Source: Octopus sinensis (lineage: Eukaryota). From it: DNA of 64,000 nt. This document shows, piece by piece, positions 14,401 through 56,530 of the stretch. Under the pieces are notes generated by a model that was not told where the DNA came from, did no database searches, and worked only from the letters and a program-made list of their open reading frames with translations. How positions within the stretch are numbered: position 1 is the first letter of the stretch; each line of letters begins with the position of its first letter. The DNA lies in assembly GCF_006345805.1 (NCBI RefSeq), contig NC_043023.1:16306001-16370000 (forward strand). Direction: 5' to 3'. A program made the translations under genes and the position numbers.

Positions 14401-14439
14401 AGGGTTGATAAACGGGTTGAGGGACCAGCTAAAAGTGCG

Positions 14440-19340: not shown

Positions 19341-19391
19341 TATCTAATTCTCTCCCAATTTTACCATTTGTCTGTCGTAGTTCACTGTGGT

Positions 19392-20898: not shown

Positions 20899-21032
20899 TT
20901 ATTTCTTAAAATATTTGCAGCAGAAGAAAGAGTGTCCGACAAGGATTATAGCAAGGCTGAGTATGCCAAGAATGATTCCGACAATCTCGAGTGTTCTGAG
21001 GGGTCTTGATCCATTAGGTTCAGGTTACGGAT
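20899..21032 (-). pseudogene. Gene A terminal exon: (N)P-stop followed by a vestigial stalk/transmembrane/cytoplasmic reading frame
   Basis: Acceptor ttgtcaactgcag|AT CCG TAA CCT GAA.. continues in frame as PEPNGSRPLRTLEIVGIILGILSLAIILVGHSFFCCKYFKK*. AATAAA overlaps the final stop. Confidence 0.75.
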
Positions 21033-23268
21033 CTGCAGTTGACAAACAATAAAATATATACCTTTTGTTTTTAACAAAAAATAGTAATATCTCCCAAGTT
21101 TGACCATTTTCATACTAAACTATTAAAAAATACTTTCGTTTCTGTTATACAAATTCCATTTCAAAGTGATCTAAAGGAAAAGTCCCCATCAAAATTTCCA
21201 GTAACACTATGTTGCACACATAAGCTTGGTTATATAAAGCCTTGTGAGTGGATTTGGTAGACGGATACTGAAGGAAGCCCGTTGTATATATGTATATATA
21301 ATGTATATATATATGTGTGTTTGTGTGTCTGTTTGTCCCCCTAGCATTGCTTGACAACTGATGCTGGGGTGTCTATGTCCCCATCACTTAGCAGTTCAGC
21401 AAGAGAACCGATAGAATAAGTACTAGGCTTACAAAGAATAAATCCTGGGATCGATTTGATCGACAAAAGGCGGTGCTCCAGCATGGCCACAGTCAAATGA
21501 CTGAAACAAGTAAAAAGAGAAAGAGAAAGAGAATATAACCCGCCCCCCCCACACACACCTTGGTATTGACCCCCTCATCCTTTGCCCTTGTGGCAAATAA
21601 AAGAAACCCTTATTATATACAACTATCAGCTGAGTCCATTGTGAAGATGGCCCCTCTACTTTCCCTCAACCAGGAAGGGCAACCAGTTTTTATCTGCTCG
21701 GGGCCCATGGCAAAGGGGATCATACAGTGGACATGTCTGAAAGGGCTGAAGACCAGCAACTGCCATTTTGTCAAAACCCTAATAAACTTTTTCAGGTTTC
21801 ACTTGAAGAGGAAAATCAGGGTGGAGAGGTAAGTACTGGCTTCCAAGCAGTTTGTTGAAAGGTGAGTGAGAGAGGTGAGCATTACCTGAGTGAATGGGCC
21901 TTCTCTTTCAGAGTGTACCTGTATATTGGAGAGGAAAGACTGGGAGAGAGTATCCACCCTGGTGGTCAGGGAGACCTTGGATTTTGTGGGCTTTCTTTAC
22001 GTGTGGCCCTTGAAAGTCCCCCCACTATCAGGGATCTTACTTTGACTTTCTTTTATTCTTTGTATGACTTTTTACATGCTAAAACCCACACTGGACCCTC
22101 CCGAATGTTTTGCTTTGTGTTAGCCCTCTGTGGTTAATAAAGAAATTATTATAAATCATTTCCTTACTCTTTATCTTCAAATCAATTCTTCCAACTTTAA
22201 GGTTGTCGTCTTCAAATCTCCAAGTCAAACATTCCTTAGTTACGTTTTTGATCCAAAGCTTGGAGATACTTGCTATCTGTGTCACTTTATAGTCAGGGCC
22301 ATCAGCGCATGTCCTGTCACATTCATATCTATTATCCTGGCAAATCCAAGCCACCGGTCGTTTCATGTTTGGTACATATATCTCAAGGTTGAGATCTCTA
22401 TAGAGCTCAGCAGTTCCTGAAATAAAGAAATCAAGTTTGCTTCCAAATCATATGGTCCTGGGTTCAGTCCCACTACACAGCACCTTGGGAAAGTGTCTTC
22501 TACTACAGCATCAGCCTTGTGAGTGGATTTTCAAGATGGAAATTGAAAGAAGCCCATTCTATGTATAATTGTGTGTATGTGTGTGTATATATATATATAC
22601 ATACACACTTGTGTCTTTCAAAGCCTTGTGAGTGTATTTGATAGATGGAAACTGAAAGAAGCCCATTGTTTATATATATGTAAATAGAAAATTATTATTT
22701 CTAAGTCTCTGAATGAGAAACATTCAGTAACATTACTCGAGAGTAAAGATTATTTGCCAACATAATATGGCAGTCCTAGTTAGGGTGATTGTTACTGCTA
22801 TTTAGCCCTAGGAAACACTGCCTCCAGCTGCGTATATGACACATTATCTATGTCCTATGGGATGCTAAACTCCCTTGTTTGAAAATATAAGGATGCAGCT
22901 AGTGCGTCATATAGCCAGCTGGAGGCGATGTTTCCTAGGGCTAAGGAACAGTAACAATCGTCCTAACCAGGACTGCAATATTATGTTGGCAAATAATCTC
23001 TACCCTAGAGTACTGTTACTCAATGTCTTTTGTTCAGAGATTTAGAAATAATTTTCTATTTGTTAGATCAGAGACTTTGTGTCACTTTGGAAAGTATATA
23101 TTTTGGACAAGAGTTTAGTGGAGTCATCTCTAGCCGAGCAGTTATTCGGTGCTGATGAAGGGAAATAACCCAGAGACCATTGGTATGCAGATAGTGTGCT
23201 GTATAACCAGCTGGAGATGATGTTTCCTGAGACAACTGCCACATTATGTTGGCAAATAATCTTTACTT

Positions 23269-23303
<35 letters not shown>

Positions 23304-23712
23304 GAGTTCAGCAAAAATTTAGATTCAAGTGAAAATGTTACTTAATTTAGATGCACCAGAATTTTGTATGGTGTTATCCTTAGAAATCCGTGGGGTGATT
23401 ATAATGAAAATAAGCAACAAGAATTACTCCGGTAATTTGGTACGATCGTTTCGTACTACATCATTTTATTAAATGTTGTAAGTATTACAACAGTTTTAAA
23501 ATACTGAGCACTCATCAGCCAATTATAGAGGTTTTCCATTAATACAAAAATGTTCAAGTTAAGTGGCAACATATAGAGAAGAAAGCCTCTATAATTGGCT
23601 GATGAGTACTCAGCATCTTAAATCTGTTGTAATACTTACAGCATTTAATAAAGTGATGTAGTACGAAACGATCGTACCAAATTACCGGAGTCATTCTTGT
23701 TGCTTATTTTGA

Positions 23713-23776
<64 letters not shown>

Positions 23777-26700
23777 GTATATATATGTATATATATATAT
23801 ATATTAAGTGCAGGGCATCACTGGCAAGTTATAAATATATAAACACACAAGAGATAAGCAAGGGACAAAATAACAAAATACTTAACACCCAGTCATAATA
23901 TTGTAAGAGGCAGCTTCTACCTGGCCGGAATCCATGCTAGGTATCAGTCAGCAAGTAATTTTCTTCATGGAACATGATTAGTTTCTTGCAGACTATTCAT
24001 TCCATGACTTTGCTGAAATGTGAGGTCAGAGAGACAGGCCTATAATTTTTAGCACCTGCCCTGCTTCCTCCTTTATGAATACAGCATATTATTCCTTCTT
24101 TCAGTTTGTCTGGGAGCTTACCAATTAAAAGAAGCTGCAGTGGCATTAGGAAGGGCATCCAGCTGTAGAAACACTGCCAGATCAGAGGGCCCTGGTGCAG
24201 CCTCCTGGCTTCCCAGACCCCGGTCGAACCGTCCAACCCGTGCTAGCATGGAAAGCGGACGTTAAACGATGATGATGATGATGAAATAGCAGTAGAAATG
24301 TTTCATCCATTATTTTCTAAGATAGGGCAGGAAGAAAATGTGCCTAATGATTGGAAAGAGGGATTCATTGTGAAATTGCCAAAAAAAGGAGATTTAAGCT
24401 TTTGCGGAAATTATAAACGGATTATGCTATTATCAGCTCCGGAAAAGATTTTAACAGAATACTTTTAGAGATGATGAGGACAGCAGTTTACAAATTGTTG
24501 TGTAAAGAAGAAGCTGGATTTAGGAAGAGATCAAATCGCCACTCTTTGTATCATCGTAGAGCAAAGCGCAGAGTGGAATGCACCGATTTATTGAATTCGA
24601 AAAAGCATTCGATAGTGTAGATAGGGAAGGCTTATTGAAAATTATGCAGCACTATGGCATACCAGACAAGTACATATCTATAATAAGAGCAACTTACCAA
24701 GGAATGTCATGCCGAGTCTTGCAAGGAAACGGAGCTACGGATAAATTCGATATAAAAACAGGAGTTCGACAGGGCTGTATACTTTCTCCCGTTTTATTTC
24801 TATTAGTCATAGATTGGATTATGAAGGAAACTACGATTGAAAGCCAAACAAGCATTGAATGGACGGATGTGGAAGCTGTAGAAGATCTCGACTTTGCAGA
24901 TGATATAGCGCTACTTTCACAAACGTAACCAAATGCAAAATAAAATGTCAAAATTAGAAGCAATAGCTGCCAAACTAGGATTGAAAGTCAACCTCAAATC
25001 AAAAATTATGCACGTTTATGAAGTAAACATTGAATGTATTCAACTAGAAACTGGTGAACTAGAGGATGTAGCCGAGTTTATGTATTCAGGTAGTAAGATA
25101 ACGTTTTCAGGTGGCACCGACGAAGATATTAAGGTGAGAATAAGTAAGGCAAGGACCGTTTTTCACCTGTTAAAGAAAGTATGGAGCGCAAGTGTAATTT
25201 CAATAAACAACAAAGTAACCTCTCGGAAGAGATGTTCTTCACTCCTGCTCCAGAGCATCGGCTGCGGGGTCACTCCGAAAAGCTCTATCTGTGACGATTT
25301 CATCTCAGTCGAAGGAGAGGGGCCTTCTCTGTCCGGGTTGCGGTTCCGTGGAATAAGCTGCCGGACGAGATAATGAAGATGCCAACGACTGCTCGGTTCA
25401 AAGTCTCCATTGACCACAAATGGCCTGAACTCTTTGCATGAACACCACCCTGTACATAACTCCATGTTCCCCTACATGGCCTTGCTTTTTGCTTTTTGAC
25501 CCCAAAAATTAACTTAACATAACTTAAGTTAAGAATTTTTAACACTAACGTAAAAGCAGTGTTATTGTATGGGGCTGAGACATGGCAAACAACAGTCAAG
25601 TCAAATAAGCAAATACAACTATTCATCAACAGATGCTTGCGTAGTATACTTAAAATTAGATGGCCCAAACACATAAGCAATATGGAGCTATGGCAAAGAG
25701 CAAATCAAGTTTCGATTAGGGAGCAAATATTTAAGAAAAGGAGGAAGTGGATTGGTAGCACAATTAGAAAAGACACACTAAATGTAGTGAAAAGTGCTTT
25801 AAAGTGGAAACCGGTTGGATATAGAAAGAAAGGTAGGCCTAAGAACTCGTGGCATAGATCAACACAAAAGGAACTAGAGAAAGGGGGACATTTATGGCAG
25901 AGTATAAGTACAGAGGCGAAATATTATGCAACATGGAATTCAATTATGAGTGGCCTATACTCCACGTTGGAGGGTCAAAGGTAGGAAAGAAGAATATATT
26001 TACCACTTTGGTAGATCTCATAAATGCTATCACTTGAGAAACCTGTAAAAGATGAAAAAAAAAACTTTGGTTTTTAAGATGAAATATTTCAAAACAATGT
26101 GAATAAATGAACATTATATTTCACAGTAATTTGATTGCTAAATGATTAAAGCAGCAATATCTGTTTTATGTTCTAAGTGGCCGGGTCCAGCCCCTCACAC
26201 CTACCCAACAATGTCAGTCTAAAAATAAACAATCACATCAGCAAAATGTCAAAACTACAAAATAAGGAATGATTAATTCAAAAACCAAGACTAAATGAGC
26301 ATTACATTAAACGGAATAAACTGATTGCTAACGAGTTAAAGTAGCCATACCTGGCACAAAGATTCTACCTGTTTCGTGTTTAAACTGGTAATGGGTCATC
26401 CTTTTACACCTGTCTTACAATGTCATTCTAAAAATGAACAGACAAGGACTGCTATGCAAAGAAGTGCTGATCTCTAACTGTGGAGGCAATCTGTGGAAGA
26501 GGTGGACCCTGGAAGGTGCAGGACAAAACGGTGGAACATGAGGGCTTTGGATGTTGAGGCTGACATGTATTGATAAGTGACTGCGATTTCTGGGGATTTG
26601 CTCTTCTACAGAAGATATGTCAAGCTAATGGAAATCAAGGATGTGGCCAGTGTCGGTAATTAGTAAAAGGCACCTGTGCCAGTGACGTGTAATTTATAAA

Positions 26701-29700
26701 TCTTTCATCAAAACTTTATTGAGAATTTTCAAAATGTGCTCCATCGGCACAATGGAAATTTCAAATGTATCTGTAGACTTGTGAAACACATTTGGAAGTA
26801 TTTGAGGAGTTTATCTTCTGCACTGCTAACTGAATGCATTCTTTAAGTTCAGCTAAAAGATTGCTCCATCTGGGGCATTGTGGTAAAGAAATTAATTGCA
26901 ATCGTATTGAAAAAAGCTGTCATGGACAGATAAGGAATGAAAATAAAATTATAAACAAAATTAAAAATTTAATCACTTAACATATATTAAATATGTGAAG
27001 CAGAGGCAAAAAGTACCTTTAAAAAAAAAGGGTCCATTTTCACTGAAATAGATAATTAATTCTGGGACTGTCTGTATTGAAAACACTTAGCCCCACTCCA
27101 ATGACCCTACACTCTGAAATCTTTACCAAGAACAAAGTCCATGGGGTAAAGAGTGGCTATAAGGGGAATCCAGGTGGGCAGATATGGAGATAATGATGTA
27201 AATAAACAAATAAAACTGAGTGGGTAAGATATACATCCATGCGTACACGTTAATAGAGAGGAAGCAAAGACTGAAAAATTTCAGACGGAGAATATTCAAG
27301 CATCAGAAATCTGAATTAAATATTAACAGAGCAAACTTACACAGACTAGAAAGGCACAGAAAATCAAAGGGAAGAATGTATGGTGTTACAGCTCCTTTCT
27401 TGGCAATCGGGGTTACTTCATCTTTGGTAGATGTACCATCCATACTCACAAATAGGTCTCGCTTTTTTTCACCAAAAATTTAGATAAAAATCAGGGGCAC
27501 AACCTATCCAATAGATATTACAGGGATCTGAAGTGGTGTATCGGTAGTCCATGGCATACCCTGGACCTGGGCTTTTCAGTTTTAAAATTGTTATGGAAAC
27601 TTTTCTGCAATGTTTACTAGAAAGCAGAAACTGGAAGTTTGGTATTTGGTATTTTTTTGACATCCAGTCACCCCAATCTTTAGTTTAAAAATTTTAATAA
27701 TTGCAAACCCTACTTACAAAGTTATAGTAAGAGTTATCAATAGGCACAGAAGTGGCTGTGTGGTAAGTAGCTTGCTTACGAACCACATGGTTCCGGGTTC
27801 AGTCTCACTGTGTGGCATGTTGGGCAAGTGTCTTTTACTATAGCCTCGGGCCGACCAAAGCCTTGTGAGTGGATTTGGTAGACAGAAACTGAAAGAAGCC
27901 CGTCGTATATATGTATATATATATATGTGTGTTTGTGTGTCTGTTTGTCCTCCAAATATCGCTTGACAACTGATGCTGGTGTGTCTACGTCCCTATTACT
28001 TAGCAGTTCGGCAAAAGAGAACCGATAGAATAAGTACTAGGCTTACAAAGAATAAATCCTAGAGTCGATTTGATCGACAAAAGGCGGTGCTCCAGCATGG
28101 CCACAGTCAAATGACTGAAACAAGTAAAAAGAGAAAGAGAATATAACCCCACCCACACACACACCTTGGTATTGACCCCCTCATCCTTTGCCCTTGTGGC
28201 AAATAAAAGAAACCCTTATTATATACAACTATCAGCTGAGTCCATTGTGAAGATGGCCCCTCTACTTTCCCTCAACCAGGAAGGGCAACCAGTTTTTATC
28301 TGCTCGGGCCCCATGGCAAAGGGGATCATACGGTGGACATGTCTGAAAGGGCTGAAGACCAGCAACTGCCATTTTGTCAAAACCCTAATAAACTTTTTCA
28401 GGTTTCACTTGAAGAGCAAAATCAGGGTGGAGAGGTAAGTGCTGGCTTCCAAGCAGTTTGTTGAAAGGTGGGTGAGAGAGGTGAGCATTACCTGAGTGAA
28501 TGGGCCTTCTCTCAGAGTGTACCTGTATATTGGAGAGGAAAGACTGGGAGAGGGCATCCACCCTCGTGGTCAGGGAGACCATGGATTTTGTGGGCTTTCT
28601 TTACGTGTAGCCCTTGAAAGTGCCCCCACTATCAGGGGTTTTACTTTGACTTTCTTTTATTCTTTGTATGACTTTTTACATGCTAAAACCCACGCTGGAC
28701 CCTCCCGAATGTTTTCCTTTGTGTTAGCCCTCTGTGGTTAATAAAGAAATTATTATAAATCATTTCCTTACTCTTTATCTCCAAATTAATTTTTCCAACA
28801 TTAAGGTTGTCATCATCAAATTTCCAAGTTGAACATTCCTTAGTTACTTTTTTGATCCAAAGCGTGGAGGTATTTCCATCCTGTGTCACTTTATAGTCAG
28901 GGCCATCAGGGCATGTCTTGTCACATTCATATTTATAATTGTCGCACTTCCAAACCACCGGTCGTTTCATATCAGGTATTGTTATCGAAAGGGTGAGACA
29001 TCCATTGAGCACAGCAATTCCTGAAATAATGAAATCAGTTAAGAAGTTTGCTTCCAAATCATATGGTCCCGGGTTCAGTCCCACTACACTGCACCTTCGG
29101 AAAGTGTCTTCTACTACAGCCTGTGTGGATTTGCTAGATGGAAACTGAAAGAAGCCCATTGTATGTATCTGTGTGTGTGTGTATGTATATGTGTGTGTGT
29201 ATATATGTATATACATACACACTTGTGTGTTTCAAAGCCTTGTGAGTGTATTTGATAGATGGAAACTGAAAGAAGCCCTTTGTTTATATATATGTATATA
29301 TATATGTAAATAGAAAATTATTATTTCTAAGTCACTGAATGAGAAACATTCAGTAACATTACTCGAGAGTAAGGATTATTTGCCAACATAATATGGCAGT
29401 CCTAGTTAGGATGATTGTTACTGTTATCTAGCCCTAGGAAACACTGCCTCCAGCTGGGTATATGACACATTATCTATGTCCTATGGGATGCTAAACTTCC
29501 TTGTTTGAAAATATAAGGATGCAGCTAGTGTGTCATATAGCCAGCTGGAGACGATGTTTCCTAGGGCTAAGGAACAGTAACAATCGTCCAGACCAGGACT
29601 GCCACATTATGTTGGCAAATAATCTTTACCCTAGAGTACTGTTACTCAATGTCTTTTGTTCAGAGATTTAGAAATAATTTTCTATTTTTTAGATCAGTGA

Positions 29701-32700
29701 CTGTGTGTCACTTTGAAAAGTATATATTTTGGACAAGAGTTTAATGGAGTCATCTCAAGCCGAGCAGTTATTCTGTGCTGATGAAGGGAAATAACACAGA
29801 GACCATTGGTATGCAGATAGTGTGCTGTATAACCAGCTGGAGATGATGTTTCCTGAGACTAAATAACAGTACCATTCGTCCTAACCAGGACTGCCACATT
29901 ATGTTGGCAAATAATCTTTATTTTATATATATATATATATATATATGTATACACACAAAATAAGAAAATGGAGGAATAGATTCCTTTCAATCATCAACTT
30001 CCAGATAATACCAATTCATATAATTTATTAACTAATTATTTAGATTTAATAGGACAGGGCTGTATACTTTCTCCCGTTTTATTTCTATTAGTCATAGATT
30101 GGATCATGAAGGAAACTACGATTGAAAGCCAAACAAGCATTGAATGGACGGATGTGGAAGCTGTAGAAGATCTCGACTTTGCAGATGATATAGCGCTACT
30201 TTCACAAACGTAACCAAATGCAAAATAAAATGTCAAAATTAGAAGCAATAGCTGCCAAACTAGGATTGAAAGTCAACCTCAAATCAAAAATTATGCACGT
30301 TTATGAAGTAAACATTGAATGTATTAAACTAGAAACTGGTGAACTAGAGGATGTAGCCGAGTTTATGTATTCAGGTAGTAAGATAACGTTTTCAGGTGGC
30401 ACCGACGAAGATATTAAGGTGAGAATAAGTAAGGCAAGGACCGTTTTTCACCTGTTAAAGAAAGTATGGAGCGCAAGTGTAATTTCAATAAAGAACAAAA
30501 TAACCTCTCGAAAGAGCTGTTCTTCACTCCTGCTCCAGAGCGTCGGCTGCGGGGTCACTCCGAAAAGCTCTATCTGTGACGATTTCATCTCAATCGAAGG
30601 AGAGGGGCCTTCTCTGTCCGGGTTGCGATTCCGTGGAATAAGCTGCCGGACGAGATAGTGAAGATGCCGACGACCGCTCGATTCAAAGTCTCCCTTGACC
30701 ACAAATGGCCTGAACTCTTTGCATGAACACCACCCTGTACATAACTCCATGTTCCCCTACATGGCCTTTTGCTGTTTGCTTTTTGAGCCCAAAAATTAAC
30801 TTAACTTAAGTTAAGAATTTTTAACACTAACGTAAAAGTGGTGTTATTGTATGGGGCTGAGACATGGCAAACAACAGTCAAGTCAAATAAGCAAATACAA
30901 TCATTCATCAACAGATGCTTGCGTAGTATACTTAAAATTAGATGGCCCCAACACATACGCAATATGGAGCTATGGCAATGAACAAATCAAGTTTTGATTA
31001 GGGAGCAAATATTTAAGAAAAGGAGGAAGTGGATTGGTAGCACAATTAGAAAAGACACACTAAATGTAGTGAAAAGTGCTTTAAAGTGGAAACCGGTTGG
31101 ATATAGAAAGAAAGGTAGGCCTAAGAACTCGTGGCATAGATCAACACAAAAGGAACTAGAGAAAGGAGGACATTCATGGCAGAGTATAAGTACAGAGGCG
31201 AAATATTATGCAACATGGAATTCAATTATGAGTGGCCTATACTCCACGTTGGAGGGTCAAATGTAGGAAACAAGAATATATTTACCACTTTGGGTGATCT
31301 TGTAAATGTTTGCACTTGAGAAACCTGTAAAATATGAAAACAAAAATTTTTGATTTTAAGATGAAATAATTCAAAACAATGTGAATAAATGAACACTATA
31401 TTTCACAGTAATTTGATTGCTAAATGATTAAACCAGCAATATCCGTTTTATGTTCTAAGTGGCCGGGTCCAGCCCCTCACACCTACCCTACAATGTCAGT
31501 CTAAAAATAAACAATCACATCAGCAAAATGTCAAAACTACAAAATAAAGAATGATTAATTCAAAAACCAAGACTAAATGAGCACTACATTAAACGAAATA
31601 AACTGATTGCTAACGAGTTAAAGTAGCCATACCTGGCACAAAGATTCTACCTGTTTCGTGTTTAAACTGGTAATGGGTCAGCCTTTTACACCTGTCTTAC
31701 AATGTCATTCTAAAAATGAACGGACAAGGACTGCTATGTAAAGAAGTGCTGATCTCTAACTGTGGAGGCAATCTGTGGAAGAGGTGGACCCTGGAAGGTG
31801 CAGGACAAAACGGTGGAACATGAGGGCTTTGGATGTTGAGGCTGACATGTATTGATAAGTGACTGCGATTTCTGGGGATTTGCTCTTCTACAGAAGATAT
31901 GTCAAGCTAATGGAAATCAAGGATGTGGCCAGTATCGGTAATTAGTAAAAGGCACCTGTGCCAGTGACGTGTAATTTATAAATCTTTCCTCAAAACTTTA
32001 TTGAGAATTTTCAAAATGTGCTCCATCGGCACAATGGAAATTTCAAATGTATCTGTAGACTTGTGAAACACATTTGGAAGTATTTGAGGAGTTTATCTTC
32101 TGCACTGCTAACTGAATGCATTCTTTAAGTTCAGCTAAAAGATTGCTCCATCTGGGGCATTGTGGTAAAGAAATTAATTGCAATCGTATTGAAAAAAGCT
32201 GTCATGGACAGATAAGGAATGAAAATAAAATTATAAACAAAATTAAAAATTTAATCACTTAACATATATTAAATATGTGAAGCAGAGACAAAAAGGGTCT
32301 TTAAAAAAAAAGGTCCAATTTCACTGAAATAGATAATTAATTCTGGGACAGTCTGTATTGAAAACACTTAGCCCTACTCAAATGACCTTACACTCTGAAA
32401 TCTTTACCAAGAACAAAGTCCATGGGGTAAAGAGTGGCTATAAGGGGAATCCAGGTGGGCAGATATGGAGATAACGATGTAAATAAACAAATAAAACTGA
32501 GTGGGTTAGATATACATCCATGCGTACACGTTAATAGAGAGGAAGCAAAGACTGAAAAATTTCAGATGGAGAATATTCAAGCATCAGATATCTGAATTAA
32601 ATATTAACAGAGCAAACTTACACAGACTAGAAAGGCACAGAAAATCAAAGGGAAGAATGTATGGTGTTACAGCTCCTTTCTTGGGGATTGGGCTTATTTC

Positions 32701-35700
32701 ATTGTTGGTAGATGTACCATCCATACTCACAAATAGGTCTCACTTTTTTTTCACCAAAAATTTAGATAAAAATCAGGGGTACAAACTATCCAATAGATAT
32801 CACAGGGATCTGAAGTGGTGCATCGGAGGTCCATGGCATACCCTGGACCTGGGCTTTTCAGTTTTAAAATTGTTATGGAAACTTTTCTGCAATGTTTACT
32901 AGAAAGCAGAAACTGGAAGTTTGGTATTTGGTATTTTTTTGACATCCAGTCACCCCAATCTTTAGTTTAAAAATTTTGATAATTGCAAACCCTACTTACA
33001 AAGTTATAGTAAGAGTTATCAATAGGCGCAGAAGTGGCTGTGTGGTAAGTAGCTTGCTTACGAACCACATGGTTCCGGGTTCAGTCTCACTGTGTGGCAT
33101 GTTGGGCAAGTGTCTTCTACTATAGCCTTGGGCCGACCAAAGCCTTGTGAGTGGATTTGGTAGACAGAAACTGAAAGAAGCCTGTCGTATATATGAATAT
33201 ATATATGTGTGTTTGTGTGTCTGTTTGTCCTCCAAACATCGCTTGACAACTGATGCTGGTGTGTCTATGTCCCCGTTACTTAGCAGTTCGGCAAAGGAGA
33301 ACTGATAGAATAAGTACTAGGCTTACAAGGAATAAATCCTGGGGTCGATTTGATCGACAAAACGCGGTGCTCCTGCATGGCCACAGTCAAATGACTGAAA
33401 CAAGTAAAAAGAGAAAAAGAATATAACCCCCACACACACACACCTTGGTATTGACCCCCTCATCCTTTGCCCTTGTGGCAAATAAAAGAAACCCTTATTA
33501 TATACAACTATCAGCTGAGTCCATTGTGAAGATGGCCCCTCTACTTTCCTTCAACCAGGAAGGGCAACCAGTTTTTATCTGCTCGGGCCCCATGGCAAAG
33601 GGGATCATACGGTGGACATGTCTGAAAGGGCTGAAGACCAGCAATTGCCATTTTGTCAAAACCCTAATAAACTTTTTCAGGTTTCACTTGAAGAGGAAAA
33701 TCAGGGTGGAGAGGTAAGTGCTGGCTTCCAAGCAGTTTGTTGAAAGGTGGGTGAGAGAGGTGAGCATTACCTGAGTGAATGGGCCTTCTCTCAGAGTGTA
33801 CCTGTATATTGGAGAGGAAAGACCGGGAGAGGGCATCCACCCTGGTGGTCAGGGAGACCTTGGATTTACTGGGCTTTCGTAACGCGTAGCCCTTGAAAGT
33901 GCCCCCACTATCAGGGGTTTTACTTTGACTTTCTTTTATTCTTTGTATGACTTTTTACATGCTAAAACCCACGCTGGACCCTCCCGAATGTTTTCCTTTG
34001 TGTTAGCCCTCTGTGGTTAATAAAGAAATTATTATAAATCATTTCTTACTCTTTATCTTCAAATCAATGTCTGCAGCATTAAGGTTGTCATCATCAAATT
34101 TCCAAGTCGAACATTCCTTAGTTACTTTTTTGATCCAAAGCGTGGAGGTATTTCCATCCTGTGTCACTTTATAGTCAGGGCCATCAGCGCATGTCCTGTC
34201 ACATTCATATTTATAATTGTCGCACTTCCAAACCACCGGTCGTTTCATATTAGGTATTGTTATCGAAAGGGTGAGACATCCATTGAGCACAGCAATTCCT
34301 GAAATAATGAAATCAGTTAAGAAGTTTGCTTCCAAATCATATGGTCCCGGGTTCAGTCCCACTACACTGCACCTTCGGAAAGTGTCTTCTACTACAGCCT
34401 GTGTGGATTTGCTAGATGGAAACTGAAAGAAGCCCATTGTATGTATCTGTGTGTGTGTGTATGTATATGTGTGTGTGTATATATGTATATACATACACAC
34501 TTGTGTGTTTCAAAGCCTTGTGAGTGTATTTGATAGATGGAAACTGAAAGAAGCCCTTTGTTTATATATATGTATATATATATGTAAATAGAAAATTATT
34601 ATTTCTAAGTCACTGAATGAGAAACATTCAGTAACATTACTCGAGAGTAAGGATTATTTGCCAACATAATATGGCAGTCCTAGTTAGGATGATTGTTACT
34701 GTTATCTAGCCCTAGGAAACACTGCCTCCAGCTGGGTATATGACACATTATCTATGTCCTATGGGATGCTAAACTTCCTTGTTTGAAAATATAAGGATGC
34801 AGCTAGTGTGTCATATAGCCAGCTGGAGACGATGTTTCCTAGGGCTAAGGAACAGTAACAATCGTCCAGACCAGGACTGCCACATTATGTTGGCAAATAA
34901 TCTTTACCCTAGAGTACTGTTACTCAATGTCTTTTGTTCAGAGATTTAGAAATAATTTTCTATTTTTTAGATCAGTGACTGTGTGTCACTTTGAAAAGTA
35001 TATATTTTGGACAAGAGTTTAGTGGAGTCATCTCTAGCCGAGCAGTTATTCTGTGCTGATGAAGGGAAATAACACAGAGACCATTGGTATGCAGATAGTG
35101 TGCTGTATAACCAGCTGGAGATGATGTTTCCTGAGACTAAATAACAGTACCATTCGTCCTAACCAGGACTGCCACATTATGTTGGCAAATAATCTTTATT
35201 TTATATATATATATATATATATATATGTATACACACAAAATAAGAAAATGGAGGAATAGATTCCTTTCAATCATCAACTTCCAGATAATACCAATTCATA
35301 TAATTTATTAACTAATTATTTAGATTTAATAGGACAGGGCTGTATACTTTCTCCCGTTTTATTTCTATTAGTCATAGATTGGATCATGAAGGAAACTACG
35401 ATTGAAAGCCAAACAAGCATTGAATGGACGGATGTGGAAGCTGTAGAAGATCTCGACTTTGCAGATGATATAGCGCTACTTTCACAAACGTAACCAAATG
35501 CAAAATAAAATGTCAAAATTAGAAGCAATAGCTGCCAAACTAGGATTGAAAGTCAACCTCAAATCAAAAATTATGCACGTTAATGAAGTAAACATTGAAT
35601 GTATTAAACTAGAAACTGGTGAACTAGAGGATGTAGCCAAGTTTATGTATTCAGGTAGTAAGATAACGTTTTCAGGTGTCACCGACGAAGATATTAAGGT

Positions 35701-38366
35701 GAGAATAAGTAAGGCAAGGACCGTTTTTCACCTGTTAAAGAAGGTATGGAGCGCAAGTGTAATTTCAATAAAGAACAAAATAACCTCTCGAAAGAGCTGT
35801 TCTTCACTCCTGCTCCAGAGCGTTGGCTGCGGGGTCACTCCGAAAAGCTCTATCTGTGACGATTTCATCTCAATCGAAGGAGAGGGGCCTTCTCTGTCCG
35901 GGTTGCGGTTCCGTGGAATAAGCTGCCGGACGAGATAGTGAAGATGCCGACGACCGCTCGATTCAAAGTCTCCCTTGACCACAAATGGCCTGAACTCTTT
36001 GCATGAACACCACCCTGTACATAACTCCATGTTCCCCTACATGGCCTTTTGCTGTTTGCTTTTTGAGCCCAAAAATTAACTTAACTTAAGTTAAGAATTT
36101 TTAACACTAACGTAAAAGTGGTGTTATTGTATGGGGCTGAGACATGGCAAACAACAGTCAAGTCAAATAAGCAAATACAATCATTCATCAACAGATGCTT
36201 GCGTAGTATACTTAAAATTAGATGGCCCCAACACATACGCAATATGGAGCTATGGCAATGAACAAATCAAGTTTTGATTAGGGAGCAAATATTTAAGAAA
36301 AGGAGGAAGTGGATTGGTAGCACAATTAGAAAAGACACACTAAATGTAGTGAAAAGTGCTTTAAAGTGGAAACCGGTTGGATATAGAAAGAAAGGTAGGC
36401 CTAAGAACTCGTGGCATAGATCAACACAAAAGGAACTAGAGAAAGGAGGACATTCATGGCAGAGTATAAGTACAGAGGCGAAATATTATGCAACATGGAA
36501 TTCAATTATGAGTGGCCTATACTCCACGTTGGAGGGTCAAATGTAGGAAACAAGAATATATTTACCACTTTGGGTGATCTTGTAAATGTTTGCACTTGAG
36601 AAACCTGTAAAAGATGAAAACAAAAATTTTTGATTTTAAGATGAAATATTTCAAAATAATGTGAATAAATGAACACTATATTTCACAGTAATTTGATTGC
36701 TAAATGATTAAACCAGCAATATCCGTTTTATGTTCGAAATAGCCGGGTCCAGCCCCTCACACCTACCCTACAATGTCAGTCTAAAAATAAACAATCACAT
36801 CAGCAAAATGTCAAAACTACAAAATAAAGAATGATTAATTCAAAAACCAAGACTAAATGAGCACTACATTAAACGAAATAAACTGATTGCTAACGAGTTA
36901 AAGTAGCCATACCTGGCACAAAGATTCTACCTGTTTCGTGTTTAAACTGGTAATGGGTCAGCCTTTTACACCTGTCTTACAATGTCATTCTAAAAATGAA
37001 CGGACAAGGACTGCTATGTAAAGAAGTGCTGATCTCTAACTGTGGAGGCAATCTGTGGAAGAGGTGGACCCTGGAAGGTGCAGGACAAAACGGTGGAACA
37101 TGAGGGCTTTGGATGTTGAGGCTGACATGTATTGATAAGTGACTGTGATTTCTGGGGATTTGCTCTTCTTCAGAAGATATGTCAAGCTAATGGAAATCAA
37201 GGATGTGGCCAGTATCGGTAATTAGTAAAAGGCACCTGTGCCAGTGACGTGTAATTTATAAATCTTTCCTCAAAACTTTATTGAGAATTTTCAAAATGTG
37301 CTCCATCGGCACAATGGAAATTTCAAATGTATCTGTAGACTTGTGAAACACATTTGGAAGTATTTGAGGAGTTTATCTTCTGCACTGCTAACTGAATGCA
37401 TTCTTTAAGTTCAGCTAAAAGATTGCTCCATCTGGGGCATTGTGGTAAAGAAATTAATTGCAATCGTATTGAAAATAGCTGTCATGGACAGATAAGGAAT
37501 GAAAATAAAATTATAAACAAAATTAAAAATTTAATCACTTAACATATATTAAATATGTGAAGCAGAGACAAAAAGGGTCTTTAAAAAAAAGGTCCAATTT
37601 CACTGAAATAGATAATTAATTCTGGGACAGTCTGTATTGAAAACACTTAGCCCTACTCAAATGACCTTACACTCTGAAATCTTTACCAAGAACAAAGTCC
37701 ATGGGGTAAAGAGTGGCTATAAGGGGAATCCAGGTGGGCAGATATGGAGATAACGATGTAAATAAACAAATAAAACTGAGTGGGTTAGATATACATCCAT
37801 GCGTACACGTTAATAGAGAGGAAGCAAAGACTGAAAAATTTCAGACGGAGAATATTCAAGCATCAGAAATCTGAATTAAATATTAACAGAGCAAACTTAC
37901 ACAGACTAGAAAGGTACAGAAAATCAAAGGGGAGAATGTATGGTGTTACAGCTCCTTTTTTGGGGATTGGGCTTACTTCATCGTTGGTAGATGTACCATC
38001 CATACTCACAAATAGGTCTCACTTTTTTTTCACCAAAAATTTAGATAAAAATCAAGGGTACAACATATCCAATAGATATCACAGGGATCTGAAGTGGTGT
38101 ATCGGTAGTCCATGGCATACCCTGGACCTGGGCTTTTCAGTTTTAAAATTGTTATGGAAACTTTTCTGCAATGTTTACTAGAAAGCAGAAACTAGAAGTT
38201 TGGTATTTGGTATTTTTTTGACATCCAGTCACCCCAATCTTTAGTTTAAAAATTTTAATAATTGCAAACCCTACTTACAAGTTATGGAAAGAAATTAAAT
38301 AAAATATAAATAAAACTTACAGACAAATGTTACAAACAGTAAGCAGAACAAGATCCATTTAGCCAT
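21025..38366 (-). CDS. Gene A (predicted, spliced): leader + three tandem [39-nt + 249-nt Ig-like] cassettes + terminal exon; 305 aa if all cassettes are joined, 113 aa with one
   Basis: Exons 38321-38366, 36566-36604, 34050-34298, 31286-31324, 28772-29020, 26004-26042, 22168-22416 and 21025-21032. All introns are GT-AG, phase 1, with strong pyrimidine tracts. Splicing yields MAKWILFCLLFVTFVCFSSA|NIYKITQSGIAVLNG... with no internal stop. No transcript evidence available. Confidence 0.8.
22168..22416 (-). CDS. Gene A Ig-like exon, cassette 1 (most divergent)
   Basis: tttcag|GA..AAG A|gtaagg, 249 nt: GTAELYRDLNLEIYVPNMKRPVAWICQDNRYECDRTCADGPDYKVTQIASISKLWIKNVTKECLTWRFEDDNLKVGRIDLKIK. Confidence 0.82.
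22682..23270. mobile_element. Intronic ~380-bp imperfect palindrome plus extra arm with a degenerate CTGATGAAGGG..CCC motif (Penelope/MITE-like)
   Basis: 22682-23061 is self-complementary. Copies at 29308-29920 and 34586-35200; absent from gene B. Confidence 0.7.
23433..23526 (-). ncRNA. Type I hammerhead ribozyme motif (sense to gene A pre-mRNA)
   Basis: Minus strand: AATTGG-CTGATGA-GTGCT(long stem II)AGTAC-GAAA-CGATCG-TA-CCAAATT. Palindromic stem III ACGATCGT, cleavage triplet GUA. Confidence 0.65.
23591..23684 (+). ncRNA. Type I hammerhead ribozyme motif (inverted partner)
   Basis: CTGATGAG at 23599, CGAAAC at 23664. Stem II GTACT/AGTAC is extended by CATC/GATG, TTAAAT/ATTTAA and TGTAA/TTACA. 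GUA at 23674-23676. Confidence 0.65.
23880..24120 (-). mobile_element. CR1-group LINE reverse transcriptase fragment
   Basis: KLKEGIICCIHKGGSRAGAKNYRPVSLTSHFSKVME followed by a degenerate HGFRPGRSC. Confidence 0.8.
24290..25990 (+). mobile_element. Decayed RTE-clade LINE (RT to 3' end) with nested CR1 3' fragment (~25220-25530)
   Basis: EFEKAFDSVDR, GVRQGCILSPVLF, DFADDIALL, VLLYGAETW, RKKGRPKNSW. The insert reads LRGHSEKLYL..RRRGAFSVRV..WNKLP..FKVSLDHKW with a TAACT-type tail. Confidence 0.9.
26004..26042 (-). CDS. Gene A 39-nt exon, cassette 1 (xFSSDSIYEIYQSG)
   Basis: Acceptor catcttttacag, donor G|gtaaat, phase 1-1. Confidence 0.78.
27745..28135 (+). mobile_element. Full-length tRNA-derived SINE at the cassette junction (copy at 33025-33415)
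   Basis: Head, body and (GAGAAA)n tail. It marks the join between intron-1-derived and intron-3-derived sequence. Confidence 0.85.
28772..29020 (-). CDS. Gene A Ig-like exon, cassette 2
   Basis: 249 nt, phase 1-1: GIAVLNGCLTLSITIPDMKRPVVWKCDNYKYECDKTCPDGPDYKVTQDGNTSTLWIKKVTKECSTWKFDDDNLNVGKINLEIK. Confidence 0.85.
30050..31270 (+). mobile_element. Copy of the decayed RTE + nested CR1 fragment (5'-deleted)
   Basis: Same lesions as 24290-25990. Joined at its 5' end to a MITE arm fragment. Confidence 0.9.
31286..31324 (-). CDS. Gene A 39-nt exon, cassette 2 (xFSSANIYKITQSG)
   Basis: cttttacag|GT..G|gtaaat. Confidence 0.8.
34050..34298 (-). CDS. Gene A Ig-like exon, cassette 3
   Basis: 249 nt, phase 1-1: GIAVLNGCLTLSITIPNMKRPVVWKCDNYKYECDRTCADGPDYKVTQDGNTSTLWIKKVTKECSTWKFDDDNLNAADIDLKIK; donor A|gtaaga. 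Confidence 0.85.
35330..36550 (+). mobile_element. Third copy of the decayed RTE + nested CR1 fragment
   Basis: Near-identical to 30050-31270 at a 5280-bp offset. Confidence 0.9.
36566..36604 (-). CDS. Gene A 39-nt exon, cassette 3 (completes the signal peptide: CFSSA|NIYKITQSG)
   Basis: cttttacag|GT..G|gtaaat. Confidence 0.82.
38321..38366 (-). CDS. Gene A leader exon (signal peptide MAKWILFCLLFVTFV)
   Basis: ttttttcag|ATC ATG GCT AAA TGG..GTC T|gtaagt. The acceptor 3 nt upstream of the ATG implies a further non-coding 5' exon that I did not locate. Confidence 0.82.
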
Positions 38367-38679
38367 GATCTGAAAAAATAATTTTGAAAAGCTGCAAAAT
38401 AACAAAGTTTATAGCCCAGGGTCCGAGGCTGGTCAGGCTGAGAAAAACAAACAGTCACAATATCATCAGTCACTCTTTAATAGATTTATGGTCGAGCCTG
38501 TGGCATTGGAGATCTTATTCTTAACTATTTCGAATACTACAGAACGCTGTACAGTAGAGACAAGTGCAGTTTGAACTTGCACAAACACTTTTTGCTACAG
38601 CATTTTCACGTCAAAATAAACGTTTTCTGAAGAAAATTCTAAATCATTTGAAACTTCTAACTGTGAACATTCTTCTTAC

Positions 38680-40834: not shown

Positions 40835-42769
40835 TGTAAAATTTGAAGAGACAGATTTAAACTTTGCACTGTTTCCGCCTCCTCCCCCTTTTTTTTTGAG
40901 TTTTATCAATTACTATACAACACTAAAGCAACTGCATTTTTTGTCTCTTTCTTTCTTCTTGCTGAATGAAAACAAATACCAAATTACAGGTATTTGTATA
41001 ATTGTGGCCTTCCAGGTAGAATCCTGGTTTAAACAGTCCTTATAATTTCAGAAAATTTTTGCAACACACACAAATGAATATGATTATTGAAAAGACAGCA
41101 TGGTGTTTCACTTTCTGGATCATAAAATGAAATATCATCTTAATTATTAATTTAAGAGAATCAGTATCAGAAAATAGCATATCGATATATTACTGATGTT
41201 CACCTTAATTTTACGAAATAATCTTTAATATATATCTTGTGTTTTTATTACTATACAATCCAATATTTACAACAGAATCTCTTCTTTTTGGACAAACCTT
41301 ATAGTTGTGGCTTGATGCAATGGGAAGTTTCAAAAACCAACTGGGAAATACAAACAACGAAAAGAACTTAGTTTCTGAAAGAAAAAAATAAAAGATATTT
41401 TTTAGAATTTTACTGAAAATGTACTGAATTTTTTAAAAATTCAAAAAGTAAAAAGGTTATGAGGGGTTATATGGGGTACTTAAACGAAAATTCCACCAAA
41501 AATCAAATTTTCAAACCAGTTTTTTTTAACAGCATAAATGCTTTAATGTGGATAAAAATATTGAAAAACATGAATACATGTTAGAGTGAGGAAGAAACAA
41601 GAAAGGTGGTTGTGGGATGTGTTAGAAACAACAGGCAGATCTCCCTTAAATCACACACCTTTCTTTACTCATAACTTTCTGACAAATGGATATTAATGGA
41701 TATATCGGAATTTGATGTGAAAATGTTTTCCGAAGGTGGAGTGAAAAGTTTTGGAAAATTCACATCAGTTGGCTTTATTTCCTCATAACTTTTGGAAAAA
41801 TGGATATTTTTTAGTGGAATTTCCTACAAATATCATTCGGATTGTGAAGGTAACGATTATATCAGAATTTAATATGTAAACAAAATTTGTGGGCTCACAC
41901 ACATACATAATTACATACACATCGTGAATTCAAACTTGATAGAAAAATGTTATACCTGTCAGTATGTGTGTGTGTGTGTGTGTGTGTGCAAACCTATCAT
42001 ATTTTTTTTTCATAATAGACTTCAATATTACTCTTTACTCTTTTACTTATTTCAGTCATTTGGCTGCGGCCATGCTGGAGCACCGCCTTTAGTCGAGGAA
42101 ATCGACCCCCAGGACTTATTCTTTGTAAGCCCAGTACTTATTCTATCGGTCTATTACGTACATGTATATGAAAGATAATGAGTGTAGATGTGTGTTTGGG
42201 TGTGATTAACTACAAGTAGATACAGCTGAATATGGCGTGATTGCGCGTACATCCGTTATCTTTCATAAACAGGGACACACATCTTTCACTTTCTCCTCTC
42301 AGAAGCAAATATCGCCTTCCACTCATCATCAAAATAAAAGAAAATAAAATAATTTTTTACGGGAATTTACGAACAATCTGCTGATCACATTCGACGCTTC
42401 TGCAGCCAAAGCCGAAAGATTTCCAGACGTAATTCTTCAGTTTTGGTAAACGACCTCATTCACTGACACAAACTTCTCTTATGGCACAAACGAAGAGGCG
42501 ACACTACTTGAGTATAGAGGTCCCGGTGCGCGCACTTGTGTAGTCACGCATCCGCACAAGCTAGTCATGACTAGTCAATCCTTACTTTGTGTTTTTGAGT
42601 TTTATTTACTTTGTTTAAAAAAAATTCACTAACACTGACCCTAACCCTAATTTTAGCCTTTCGTTTTTTTTTCATTAATTAATAAATTAATTTAAATGTT
42701 ACGCGTGTGTCTAAAATTATTCGTTTTGTTTTTGTTTTGAGACACACGTGTATTGTTTAAACTATTGTT

Positions 42770-44119: not shown

Positions 44120-44154
<35 letters not shown>

Positions 44155-44319: not shown

Positions 44320-44366
<47 letters not shown>

Positions 44367-51083: not shown

Positions 51084-51217
51084 TTATTTCTTAAAATATT
51101 TGCAACAGAAGAAAGAGAGTCAGACAAGGATTGCAGCAAGGCTGAGTATGCCAAGAATGATTCCGACAATCTCGAGTGTTCTGAGGGGTCTTGATCCATT
51201 AGGTTCAGGTTACGGAT
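51084..51217 (-). pseudogene. Gene B terminal exon with vestigial TM frame (TAA at 51210-51212, additional TGA at 51120-51122)
   Basis: ttgtcaattacag|AT CCG TAA PEPNGSRPLRTLEIVGIILGILSLAAILV*LSFFCCKYFKK*. Confidence 0.75.
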
Positions 51218-56321: not shown

Positions 56322-56530
56322 GATCTGAAAAAATAATTTTGAAAAGCTGCAAAATAACAAAGTTTATAGCCCAGGGTCCGAGGCTGGTCAGGCTGAGAAA
56401 AACAAACAGTCACAATATCATCAGTCACTCTTTAATAGATTTGTGGTCAAGCCTGTGGCATTGGAGATCTTATTCTTAACTATTTCGAATACTATAGAAC
56501 GCTGTACAGTAGAGACAAGTGCAGTTTGAA

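What the first reader, a model, noticed from the sequence alone, without database searches (positions are those of the whole stretch)
21025..38366. Hidden Ig-like gene: one leader, three tandem diversified domain cassettes, one terminal exon - a candidate variable-exon system
Seen: a single signal-peptide exon (38321-38366) is followed by three cassettes spaced 5.3-6.6 kb apart. Each has a 39-nt exon and a 249-nt exon, all phase 1-1 with intact GT-AG sites and open frames, although the introns are full of decayed TEs. One terminal exon follows. The paralog (gene B) has only one cassette. Known: symmetric phase-1 exons are typical of Ig-superfamily domains, and clustered variable exons joined to shared exons occur in Dscam and clustered protocadherins. 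Inference: the locus makes a 3-domain protein, 1-3-domain skipping isoforms, or combinatorial 39-nt x 249-nt exon choices. Each 39-nt exon still carries the signal-peptide end (FSSA in cassettes 2 and 3, FSSD in cassette 1), so each could serve as the first domain. I do not recognise a named family.
Basis: partly seen in the sequence, partly recalled or inferred. Interest (0 to 1): 0.9.

Follow-up and report, generated by a model that had tools for sequence, protein, structure and literature searches.

The report
Octopus Ig-like surface-protein gene array
The exons are real, but they are a very recent three-fold tandem duplication inside a fast-evolving octopus-only family of small Ig-like surface proteins that NCBI already annotates (uncharacterised), not a Dscam- or protocadherin-style pick-one exon system.

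Summary
All have canonical AG/GT sites, phase 1-1 and open frames. The window is Octopus sinensis chromosome sequence. These exons are not hidden: they lie in NCBI gene LOC115225115 ("uncharacterized protein", 18 protein isoforms).

The 39+249-nt pair encodes a 95-aa unit that folds with high confidence (pLDDT 92.9) as a non-canonical Ig-like V/I-type sandwich.

The three cassettes come from tandem duplication of a 5,278-bp unit, introns and transposon relics included. Cassettes 1 and 2 differ by 1.3% outside the exons.

Twelve of the 18 annotated isoforms carry all three cassettes in series; the other six skip exons. That exon has a TAA at codon 3 in front of a relic membrane anchor.

The surprising part is that exons diverge faster than their introns (16.5% against 3-5% for cassette 1 vs 3; dN/dS about 1-2). 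This points to diversifying selection plus gene conversion.

The family has at least 83 domain exons in this genome and was found only in octopods. No paper in the searched library names these genes.

Verdict: a new member of a known kind, of moderate interest. Function and real splicing remain untested.

The parts
41298..41374 (-). Gene A 77-nt 5'UTR exon. It has its own acceptor, so a further upstream exon must exist.
   Evidence: Identical 77-nt copy in gene B at 58040-57964. Read as upstream exon in NCBI and O. vulgaris models P0005, P0018 and P0019.
38321..38369 (-). Gene A leader exon. CDS 38366-38321 encodes MAKWILFCLLFVTFV plus 1 base (phase 1), with a GTAAGT donor.
   Evidence: The leader peptide is identical in downstream gene C. 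No NCBI isoform starts here.
36566..36604 (-). Cassette 1 39-nt exon. It encodes (C)FSSANIYKITQS: the signal-peptide c-region/linker plus strand A.
34050..34298 (-). Cassette 1 249-nt exon, the body of the Ig-like domain (GIAVLNGC...NAADIDLKIK).
   Evidence: AF2 and Foldseek.
31286..31324 (-). Cassette 2 39-nt exon, identical to that of cassette 1.
28772..29020 (-). Cassette 2 249-nt exon. It has 10 nt and 9 aa differences from cassette 1, six of the nt changes falling in the G strand.
26004..26042 (-). Cassette 3 39-nt exon (FSSDSIYEIYQS). It differs from c1/c2 at 7 of 39 nt, inside introns that differ by about 3%. This variant is unique in the genome.
22168..22416 (-). Cassette 3 249-nt exon, the most diverged. 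It has at least 37 differences from each of the 27 other paralogous exons compared.
20899..21032 (-). Gene A terminal exon. It reads A|AT CCG TAA = N P stop (stop at 21027-21025). A relic in-frame anchor follows: PEPNGSRPLRTLEIVGIILGILSLAIILVGHSFFCCKYFKK*.
   Evidence: Gene C has AAA (Lys) where A and B have TAA. Only isoform X6 uses this exon.
27737..38292 (-). Two tandem copies of a 5,278-bp duplication unit (38292-33015 and 33014-27737). Each holds one 39-nt and one 249-nt exon plus introns and transposon relics. A third, older partial unit extends down to about 21236.
   Evidence: Self-alignment: 24768-33014 matches 30053-38292 at 97.9% over 8,252 nt. Unit-by-unit counts.
51084..58040 (-). 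Paralogue gene B. 5'UTR exon 58040-57964; leader exon 56324-56276; 39-nt exon 54305-54267; 249-nt exon 52559-52311; terminal exon 51217-51084. The terminal exon has the same TAA, plus a TGA inside the anchor relic.
   Evidence: NCBI isoform X10 starts at this leader and runs on through cassettes c1-c3.

Best explanation
The region is part of a tandem array of an octopod-restricted gene family. The family encodes small, N-glycosylated cell-surface or secreted proteins built from a non-canonical Ig-like domain.

Shown here:
- The canonical gene is seen intact 5-11 kb beyond the window start (gene C). It has a leader exon, a 39-nt exon (end of signal peptide plus strand A), a 249-nt exon (rest of the domain) and an anchor exon (TM or GPI-like).
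- Gene A arose when a 5.28-kb piece was duplicated in tandem twice. That piece runs from 28 nt behind the leader exon to about 1 kb behind the 249-nt exon.
- Both exons of the piece are phase 1-1, so the result reads through as three Ig-like domains in series. The domains are joined by the fossil signal-peptide ends (SFSSA).
- A roughly 30-kb segmental duplication made genes B and A.
- Both carry an AAA-to-TAA change at codon 3 of the anchor exon.
- Family exons diverge faster than their introns, dN is at least dS, and exon and intron trees disagree.

Inferred:
- On their own, A and B would give soluble proteins ending in ...KIKNP.
- Alternatively, as in most NCBI models, transcripts read through B, then A, then C and borrow gene C's intact TM exon. 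This gives proteins of 4-6 domains, with occasional frame-neutral exon skipping.
- I read the exon-versus-intron pattern as diversifying selection on a recognition surface (strands A/A'/B, the D-E turn and strand G), combined with gene conversion between paralogues.
- The function is probably extracellular recognition (immune, self/non-self or gamete-type). This was not tested.
For: Organism, annotation and isoforms:
- NCBI names identify the source as Octopus sinensis and the gene as LOC115225115; the isoforms are mapped.
- Twelve of 18 isoforms hold c1+c2+c3.

Duplication structure:
-. The two units are 5,278 bp each. They show 63/4984 non-exon differences, 10/249 in the large exon and 0/39 in the small one.

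Canonical neighbour and the stop:
- Gene C and the AAA versus TAA difference.

Fold:
- AF2 pLDDT 92.9, pTM 0.84.
- 101 PDB matches at E<=0.001. The 50 best-scoring listed are all Ig V-type or I-type domains, or complexes that contain one, with query-normalised TM-scores of 0.51-0.70.
- A profile search reaches giant multi-I-set proteins.
- W36, C45 and C49 are invariant. C38 and C75 co-occur: 22 sequences have both, 18 have neither, 4 are mixed.

Selection:
- 249-nt exon versus 600-nt flanks: c1-c3 16.5% vs 5.3/3.4% (p=2.5e-10); c2-c3 17.3% vs 5.3/2.5%; c1-c2 4.0% vs 0/1.8%.
- dN/dS is 0.9-2.3.
- Family-wide, the exon is more diverged than the intron in 118 of 123 pairs.
- Summed dN/dS is 1.34 and dN/d(intron) is 1.64.
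- By parsimony the exon shows 0.60 and the intron 0.44 changes per site, with codon positions 1 and 2 at least as fast as position 3, and the two trees discordant.
- The c3 variants have no donor elsewhere in the genome.

Family size and range:
- At least 83 domain exons, 81 of them without stops, 37 on this chromosome.
- Named hits come only from Octopus species and Argonauta.
- An intron-less full CDS of a one-cassette relative sits on a 1,067-nt Logan contig of run SRR3401912.
Against: - No RNA reads were available. The isoforms are NCBI computed models and may be distorted by multi-mapping among 90-99% identical paralogues.
- Several models need introns of 225-240 kb that cross an oppositely oriented paralogue. 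The surrounding assembly shows a mirror-image duplication that may be an artefact.
- dN/dS near 1-2 on 95 codons is not significant for any single pair, and the pairs are not independent.
- In the tree-based count the exon excess over the intron is only 1.4-fold.
- Homogenisation of introns by gene conversion could produce part of the exon-over-intron pattern without faster exon change.
- The TAA in both terminal exons, and the absence of any model starting at leader A, also fit partial decay.
- The function is pure inference.
Confidence: 0.7

Rival explanations
1. The cassettes are alternative modules, chosen singly or combinatorially (Dscam- or clustered-protocadherin-like), to give each cell or transcript a different recognition domain.
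For: - All exons are phase 1-1, so every combination stays in frame.
- NCBI models include B39>c1-249 (X12, X16), 39>39 junctions (X8, X9), c2-39>c3-249 (X14), skipping of the B cassette (X11, X15) or of c3 (X2, X4, X5, X13), several alternative first exons and four different tails.
- Similar junctions, including 39>39, occur in the paralogous locus LOC115225116 (P0006).
- Exons are driven apart faster than introns.
Against: - Twelve of 18 models include all three cassettes in series. None uses exactly one, and none joins a leader directly to c2 or c3.
- Cassettes have no leader or promoter of their own; the window holds only two leaders.
- c1 and c2 differ by 9 residues and are a very recent duplicate.
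- Paralogues have 1-3 cassettes with no fixed array.
- The skipping variants may be splicing noise or mapping artefacts.
Confidence: 0.15
2. These are decaying duplicates. Genes A and B are young, non-functional copies on their way to becoming pseudogenes, and the open exons are simply too young to have been broken.
For: - Both anchor exons share a TAA at codon 3, and gene B has an extra TGA.
- dN/dS is about 1 for some pairs.
- No annotated isoform starts at leader A.
- The c1/c2 duplication is only 1.3% diverged.
Against: - Exon divergence exceeds intron divergence 3-5-fold for c3, which relaxed constraint alone cannot give.
- Despite 41 substitutions, c3 keeps its frame, its splice sites and the invariant W and C residues.
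- 81 of 83 family exons have no stop.
- The exons are built into 18 NCBI protein models.
Confidence: 0.1
3. This is an assembly artefact. The extra cassette(s) are two haplotypes, or a mis-resolved repeat, laid down in tandem.
For: - c1 and c2 units differ by about 1.4%, a level that two alleles of one locus could plausibly also show (my judgement, not measured here).
- The wider cluster shows a mirror-image duplication at 98-99.8% identity, and unplaced scaffolds duplicate parts of it.
Against: - The window has no gaps.
- c3 is clearly distinct.
- Three-domain relatives are annotated in a second O. sinensis locus, in O. vulgaris and in O. bimaculoides, so multi-cassette genes are a real feature of the family.
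Confidence: 0.05

Closest known systems
Arthropod Dscam1 and chelicerate sDscam (Ig-exon arrays)
   Same: Clustered, duplicated, diversifying exons encode Ig-type domains. The sDscam Ig1 structure (7y5j) is among the fold matches, with TM 0.59. Several isoforms are annotated.
   Different: Dscam arrays are mutually exclusive, with one exon per cluster per mRNA, and each exon usually encodes half or one domain of a large constant protein. Here the cassettes are in series and mostly all included. The protein is tiny. There is no sequence relationship beyond the fold.
Clustered protocadherins
   Same: Tandem units are joined to shared 3' exon(s) in the annotation. In the NCBI models several alternative 5' starts share gene C's TM exon.
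   Different: Each protocadherin variable exon has its own promoter and encodes a whole ectodomain plus TM. Here only whole genes have leaders, and sharing seems to arise from read-through after a stop mutation in the anchor exons. These are not cadherin domains.
Vertebrate leukocyte-receptor-type Ig clusters (KIR/LILR, fish NITR)
   Same: Fast-evolving tandem clusters of small Ig-domain surface receptors, with one phase-1 exon per domain, copy-number change by unequal crossing-over, gene conversion and diversifying selection. From memory (a lead, not a test): KIR/LILR genes also split the signal peptide over a leader exon and a 36-nt mini-exon.
   Different: No detectable homology. No signalling tail or charged TM residue was seen; tails are 7-12 residues or GPI-like. 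The mini-exon was duplicated together with the domain exon. The disulfide pattern differs.
Invertebrate diversified IgSF immune factors (snail FREPs, amphioxus VCBPs)
   Same: Lineage-restricted, tandemly expanded, diversified Ig-type domains in an animal without antibodies.
   Different: FREPs carry a fibrinogen domain and VCBPs a chitin-binding domain. These octopus proteins have only the Ig-like unit(s) plus an anchor. An immune role is not shown.
Titin/obscurin I-set domains
   Same: These are the best compact structural matches: 2yz8 TM 0.66/0.69 with rmsd 3.0 A, and 2bk8 TM 0.66/0.65. Like many I-set domains, the unit lacks the canonical B-F disulfide. The only PDB sequence hit is titin at E=0.084.
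   Different: Those are intracellular muscle proteins. Here the proteins have signal peptides, N-glycosylation sequons, and extra disulfides (C45-C49 invariant; C38-C75 facultative).

Membership tests
Immunoglobulin superfamily (V/I-type Ig-like domain) | Two-sheet Greek-key beta-sandwich of 7-9 strands | tested here: met
   The AF2 model of the 95-aa unit has pLDDT 92.9. Strands A, A', B, C, C', D, E, F and G are present, with a short helix before F. The 50 best-scoring Foldseek PDB hits listed are all Ig V-type or I-type domains or complexes containing one. This rests on a predicted model, not a solved one.
Immunoglobulin superfamily (V/I-type Ig-like domain) | Conserved core tryptophan in strand C | tested here: met
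   W36 is invariant in 44 family domains.
Immunoglobulin superfamily (V/I-type Ig-like domain) | Canonical disulfide between strands B and F | tested here: not met
   No conserved Cys lies in strand B. Instead C45 and C49 are invariant and C38/C75 co-occur. Many accepted Ig domains (for example titin I-set) also lack it, so this does not exclude membership.
Immunoglobulin superfamily (V/I-type Ig-like domain) | Match to a curated Ig sequence model | tested here: inconclusive
   Pfam I-set scores 24.1 bits against a cut-off of 23.7, but only for the three-domain protein summed. A single domain gives no Ig hit. The family profile reaches multi-I-set giants. Against PDB, only titin at E=0.084.
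Immunoglobulin superfamily (V/I-type Ig-like domain) | Domain encoded by phase 1-1 exon(s) | tested here: met
   The 39-nt and 249-nt exons are both phase 1-1. Twenty-eight of 28 paralogous exons are 249 nt.
Dscam-type mutually exclusive exon array | Exactly one exon of the array is present in each mRNA | tested here: not met
   In the NCBI models 12 of 18 isoforms contain all three cassettes and none contains exactly one. This was tested on computed models only.
Dscam-type mutually exclusive exon array | Docking/selector RNA pairing or an equivalent exclusion mechanism | not tested
   Introns of c1 and c2 are about 99% identical, so no informative search was possible.
Clustered-protocadherin-type locus | Each variable exon has its own promoter and start codon | tested here: not met
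   Only two leader exons (38366, 56321) occur in the window. Cassettes c2 and c3 have none.
Clustered-protocadherin-type locus | Shared constant 3' exons | tested here: inconclusive
   Most NCBI models end in gene C's TM exon at C27:16295572-16295429. Read support could not be checked.

The most novel reading that the evidence does not exclude
The B-A-C array is a single, evolutionarily young transcription unit. In it, Ig-like cassettes that selection is actively driving apart are combined in regulated ways: 1-6 domains, several first exons, and soluble, TM or GPI-like tails. That would make it an octopod-specific, independently evolved recognition-diversity locus, a cephalopod counterpart of Dscam or FREP-type systems, caught at birth.
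Probability: 0.15. Interest if true: 0.8.

Novelty: new member of a known kind. Interest (0 to 1): 0.42.

Why it matters
Cephalopod immune and self/non-self recognition molecules are largely unknown. A large family that is restricted to octopods, surface-exposed, Ig-like, and whose exons change faster than their introns is a concrete candidate set for such roles.

The locus is also a clean snapshot of how multi-domain Ig proteins and alternative cassettes are born:
- a phase-1 exon pair is copied by unequal crossing-over;
- the fossil signal-peptide end is reused as a linker;
- a stop mutation in the anchor exons favours fusion with the next gene.

None of this is new in kind, and function is untested.

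Tried and rejected
- tblastn of the NCBI proteins on the window dropped most repeated hits. I replaced it with exact peptide mapping.
- An IQ-TREE partition-rate run timed out.
- A first parsimony count that included paralogues with non-homologous flanks gave meaningless intron rates. I redid it on 11 paralogues with alignable introns.
- I considered that the excess exon differences were imported by gene conversion from another paralogue. For c3 no donor exists in the assembly. For the c1/c2 G-strand patch, conversion remains likely, because both variants recur in other paralogues.
- I tried to use a putative first exon (window 714-634) as evidence that only gene C has a promoter. It is a dispersed repeat with at least 40 copies, so it says little.
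- A-to-I editing or read-through of the TAA was considered. Editing cannot restore Lys, and there is no evidence for either.
- Five literature searches and one paper check found no paper naming these genes or the family.
- No transcript contigs of this species were retrievable.
Full report
OBSERVATION

The gene lies on the minus strand. I number the cassettes c1 to c3 in transcription order, from high to low coordinates.

- Leader: 38366-38321 reads MAKWILFCLLFVTFV plus one base and ends in a GTAAGT donor.
- 39-nt exons: 36604-36566, 31324-31286 and 26042-26004.
- 249-nt exons: 34298-34050, 29020-28772 and 22416-22168.
- All six cassette exons have a polypyrimidine tract and AG acceptor, a GTAAG/GTAAA donor, phase 1-1 and open frames.
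- Joined, they read as leader plus three 96-residue repeats, followed by N-P-stop.
- A paralogue (gene B) has one cassette: leader 56321-56276, 39-nt exon 54305-54267, 249-nt exon 52559-52311.

The pattern is not chance. Twenty-eight of 28 paralogous exons fetched from the same genome are exactly 249 nt, open and AG/GT-flanked.

The window has no gaps. The introns hold LINE reverse-transcriptase fragments and about 400-bp dispersed repeats.

WHAT IT IS

Protein searches identify the source as Octopus sinensis. The exons are part of NCBI gene LOC115225115, "uncharacterized protein". It has 18 protein isoforms, XP_036369920 to XP_036369945. So the gene is uncharacterised but not hidden.

I mapped all 18 isoforms onto the window:

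- NCBI treats gene B, gene A and the next gene downstream (gene C) as one unit.
- Twelve isoforms contain c1, c2 and c3 in series.
- X8 skips B-249. X9 skips c2-249. X11 and X15 skip the B cassette. X12 and X16 join B-39 to c1-249. X14 joins c2-39 to c3-249. X2, X4, X5 and X13 skip c3.
- X10 starts at leader B. No isoform starts at leader A.
- Only X6 ends at terminal exon A.

Most isoforms end in a TM exon (NPKPEPPKPKTYSILEIVGISFGSLILAAILVGLAFFGYKYFTK). It lies at C27:16295572-16295429, 10.4 kb beyond the window start.

Gene C is a complete canonical gene. It has a 5'UTR exon, a leader identical to A's, a 39-nt exon, a 249-nt exon and a TM exon.

Terminal exons A (21032-20899) and B (51217-51084) read N-P-TAA. 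An in-frame relic anchor follows: PEPNGSRPLRTLEIVGIILGILSLAIILVGHSFFCCKYFKK. Gene C has AAA at that codon. An O. vulgaris relative also has Lys there (P0019).

ORIGIN

Self-alignment shows 24768-33014 matching 30053-38292 at 97.9% over 8,252 nt. This is a tandem repeat of a 5,278-bp unit that includes introns and transposon relics.

- c1 and c2 units differ at 63 of 4,984 non-exon positions (1.26%), at 10 of 249 in the large exon and at 0 of 39 in the small one.
- The upstream breakpoint is 28 nt behind the leader exon.
- Each copy therefore carries the mini-exon that encodes the signal-peptide end. That is why internal linkers read SFSSA.
- A larger duplication (12685-22586 matching 42948-52736, and 40127-43139 matching 56798-59799, at 94-98%) produced B and A.

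THE DOMAIN

With a 44-sequence family alignment, AlphaFold2 gives pLDDT 92.9 and pTM 0.84. The model has strands A to G and a short helix before F.

Foldseek against the PDB gives 101 matches at E<=0.001. These include antibody VL, shark vNAR, nanobodies, obscurin and titin I-set domains and sDscam Ig1. Query-normalised TM-scores for the 50 listed run from 0.51 to 0.70, at 10-19% identity.

At sequence level the domain is barely recognisable as Ig:

- Pfam I-set scores 24.1 bits against a 23.7 cut-off, and only for the three-domain protein.
- The only PDB sequence hit is titin at E=0.084.
- A family profile searched against 1.8 billion proteins finds 53 hits. Beyond the family, those I checked are giant multi-I-set proteins.

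W36, C45 and C49 are invariant. C38 and C75 co-occur (22 both, 18 neither, 4 mixed). A third pair, C81/C86, appears in some domains. The canonical B-F disulfide is absent.

Family tails are either a TM helix plus 7-12 residues or a GPI-like hydrophobic end.

FAMILY

- The genome holds at least 83 domain exons, 81 of them without a stop.
- Thirty-seven lie on this 21-Mb chromosome, and 19 of those fall between 16.11 and 16.63 Mb.
- Named relatives come only from Octopus sinensis, O. vulgaris, O. bimaculoides and Argonauta hians.
- A 1,067-nt Logan contig of run SRR3401912 holds an intron-less full CDS of a one-cassette relative. This indicates that family members are transcribed with this exon structure.

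THE UNEXPECTED PART

Exons are more diverged than their introns. Within the window, the 249-nt exon compared with its 600-nt flanks gives:

| Pair | Exon | Flanks | p |
|---|---|---|---|
| c1-c3 | 16.5% | 5.3% / 3.4% | 2.5e-10 |
| c2-c3 | 17.3% | 5.3% / 2.5% | 2.7e-12 |
| c1-c2 | 4.0% | 0% / 1.8% | 0.0011 |

- The 39-nt exon differs by 18-31% where its flanks differ by 3-9%.
- dN/dS is 0.9-2.3.
- Family-wide, the exon exceeds the intron in 118 of 123 comparable pairs, with means of 13.4% and 7.0%.
- Summed dN/dS is 1.34 and dN/d(intron) is 1.64.
- A parsimony count on 11 paralogues, each partition on its own tree, gives 0.60 changes per site for the exon and 0.44 for the intron. Codon positions 1 and 2 (0.74, 0.60) are at least as fast as position 3 (0.48). 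The exon and intron trees disagree.
- The c3 variants have no donor elsewhere in the assembly.
- Variability concentrates in the mini-exon/strand A, strands A'-B, the D-E turn and strand G. The segment P28-T58 (PNMKRPVVWKC.NYKYECDRTC...) is nearly fixed.

I read this as diversifying selection on one part of the surface, combined with gene conversion. It is not decay.

There are caveats. The pairs are not independent. Single-pair dN/dS values are noisy. Intron homogenisation could contribute to the pattern.

MECHANISM (committed reading, confidence about 0.7)

- This is a young tandem array of a fast-evolving octopod Ig-like surface-protein family.
- Gene A is a three-domain member made by cassette duplication.
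- The shared stop in the anchor exons of A and B makes them either soluble (X6-type) or dependent on read-through splicing into gene C's TM exon.
- Exon skipping is frame-neutral and occurs in the annotation, but series inclusion is the default.
- The function is inferred to be extracellular recognition.

Rivals: a true variable-exon system (0.15), decaying duplicates (0.1) and an assembly artefact (0.05).

LIMITS

- No reads could be examined, so the isoforms are computed models.
- Several models need introns of 225-240 kb across an oppositely oriented paralogue.
- The cluster shows a mirror-image duplication at 98-99.8% identity that may be an assembly artefact.
- No paper in the searched library names these genes.

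Noticed in passing
G000:C27 about 16.11-16.63 Mb (window = 16306001-16370000); loci L009/L010, L019/L020, L018/L021, L024/L025: Family exons are arranged as a mirror image around about 16.367 Mb; paired coordinates sum to about 32.73 million. The twins are 98.3-99.8% identical over 3.2 kb on opposite strands. This is either a giant inverted duplication or an assembly or haplotig artefact. It affects how far the long NCBI gene models can be believed.
   Followed up: partly
window 2950-3530, 16976-18153, 47211-48093, 62432-63166: Arrays of a 147-nt satellite (4-8 copies, 93-97% matches) lie in both orientations downstream of genes A and B and near both window ends.
   Followed up: no
window 18665-19322 and 48605-49262: A 140-nt tandem repeat (4.7 copies) lies at matching positions of the A and B duplication units.
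   Followed up: no
window 40099-40834 and 56790-57507: A 254-nt tandem repeat (about 2.9 copies) sits in the intron between the 5'UTR exon and the leader exon of both gene A and gene B.
   Followed up: no
window 24909-25984, 30194-30658, 35474-35938, 53222-54247, 55024-55644 (+ strand): Open fragments of non-LTR retrotransposon reverse transcriptase lie antisense in the introns. One abuts the 39-nt exon in every cassette and was copied along with it.
   Followed up: no
window 634-714 (- strand): This sequence ends in a GTAAGT donor and closely resembles the first exon of LOC115225116 isoform X6. It lies 4.4 kb upstream of gene C's 5'UTR exon. It belongs to a dispersed repeat with at least 40 genomic copies at 78-98% identity, so it is probably a transposon-derived first exon.
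   Followed up: partly
window about 14000-16000 and 44000-46000: These strongly GC-skewed (+0.41 to +0.43) low-complexity stretches include a 122-nt repeat. They are duplicated with the A and B units.
   Followed up: no
window 34239-34241 and 28961-28963 (codon for Cys20 of c1 and c2): c1 and c2, and one domain of LOC115225116, carry an extra fifth cysteine (LNGC) where 38 of 44 aligned family domains have N or S. An unpaired Cys could allow covalent dimers.
   Followed up: no
protein P0018 (labelled Octopus vulgaris in the database): A one-cassette relative is fused in the annotation to a histone-like N-terminus (precomputed Pfam families PF00808 and PF00125). This is almost certainly a chimeric gene model.
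   Followed up: no
window 1-498: A compound tandem repeat with periods of 16, 30 and 46 nt (GTGGAATATGTGCATC...) sits at the window start.
   Followed up: no
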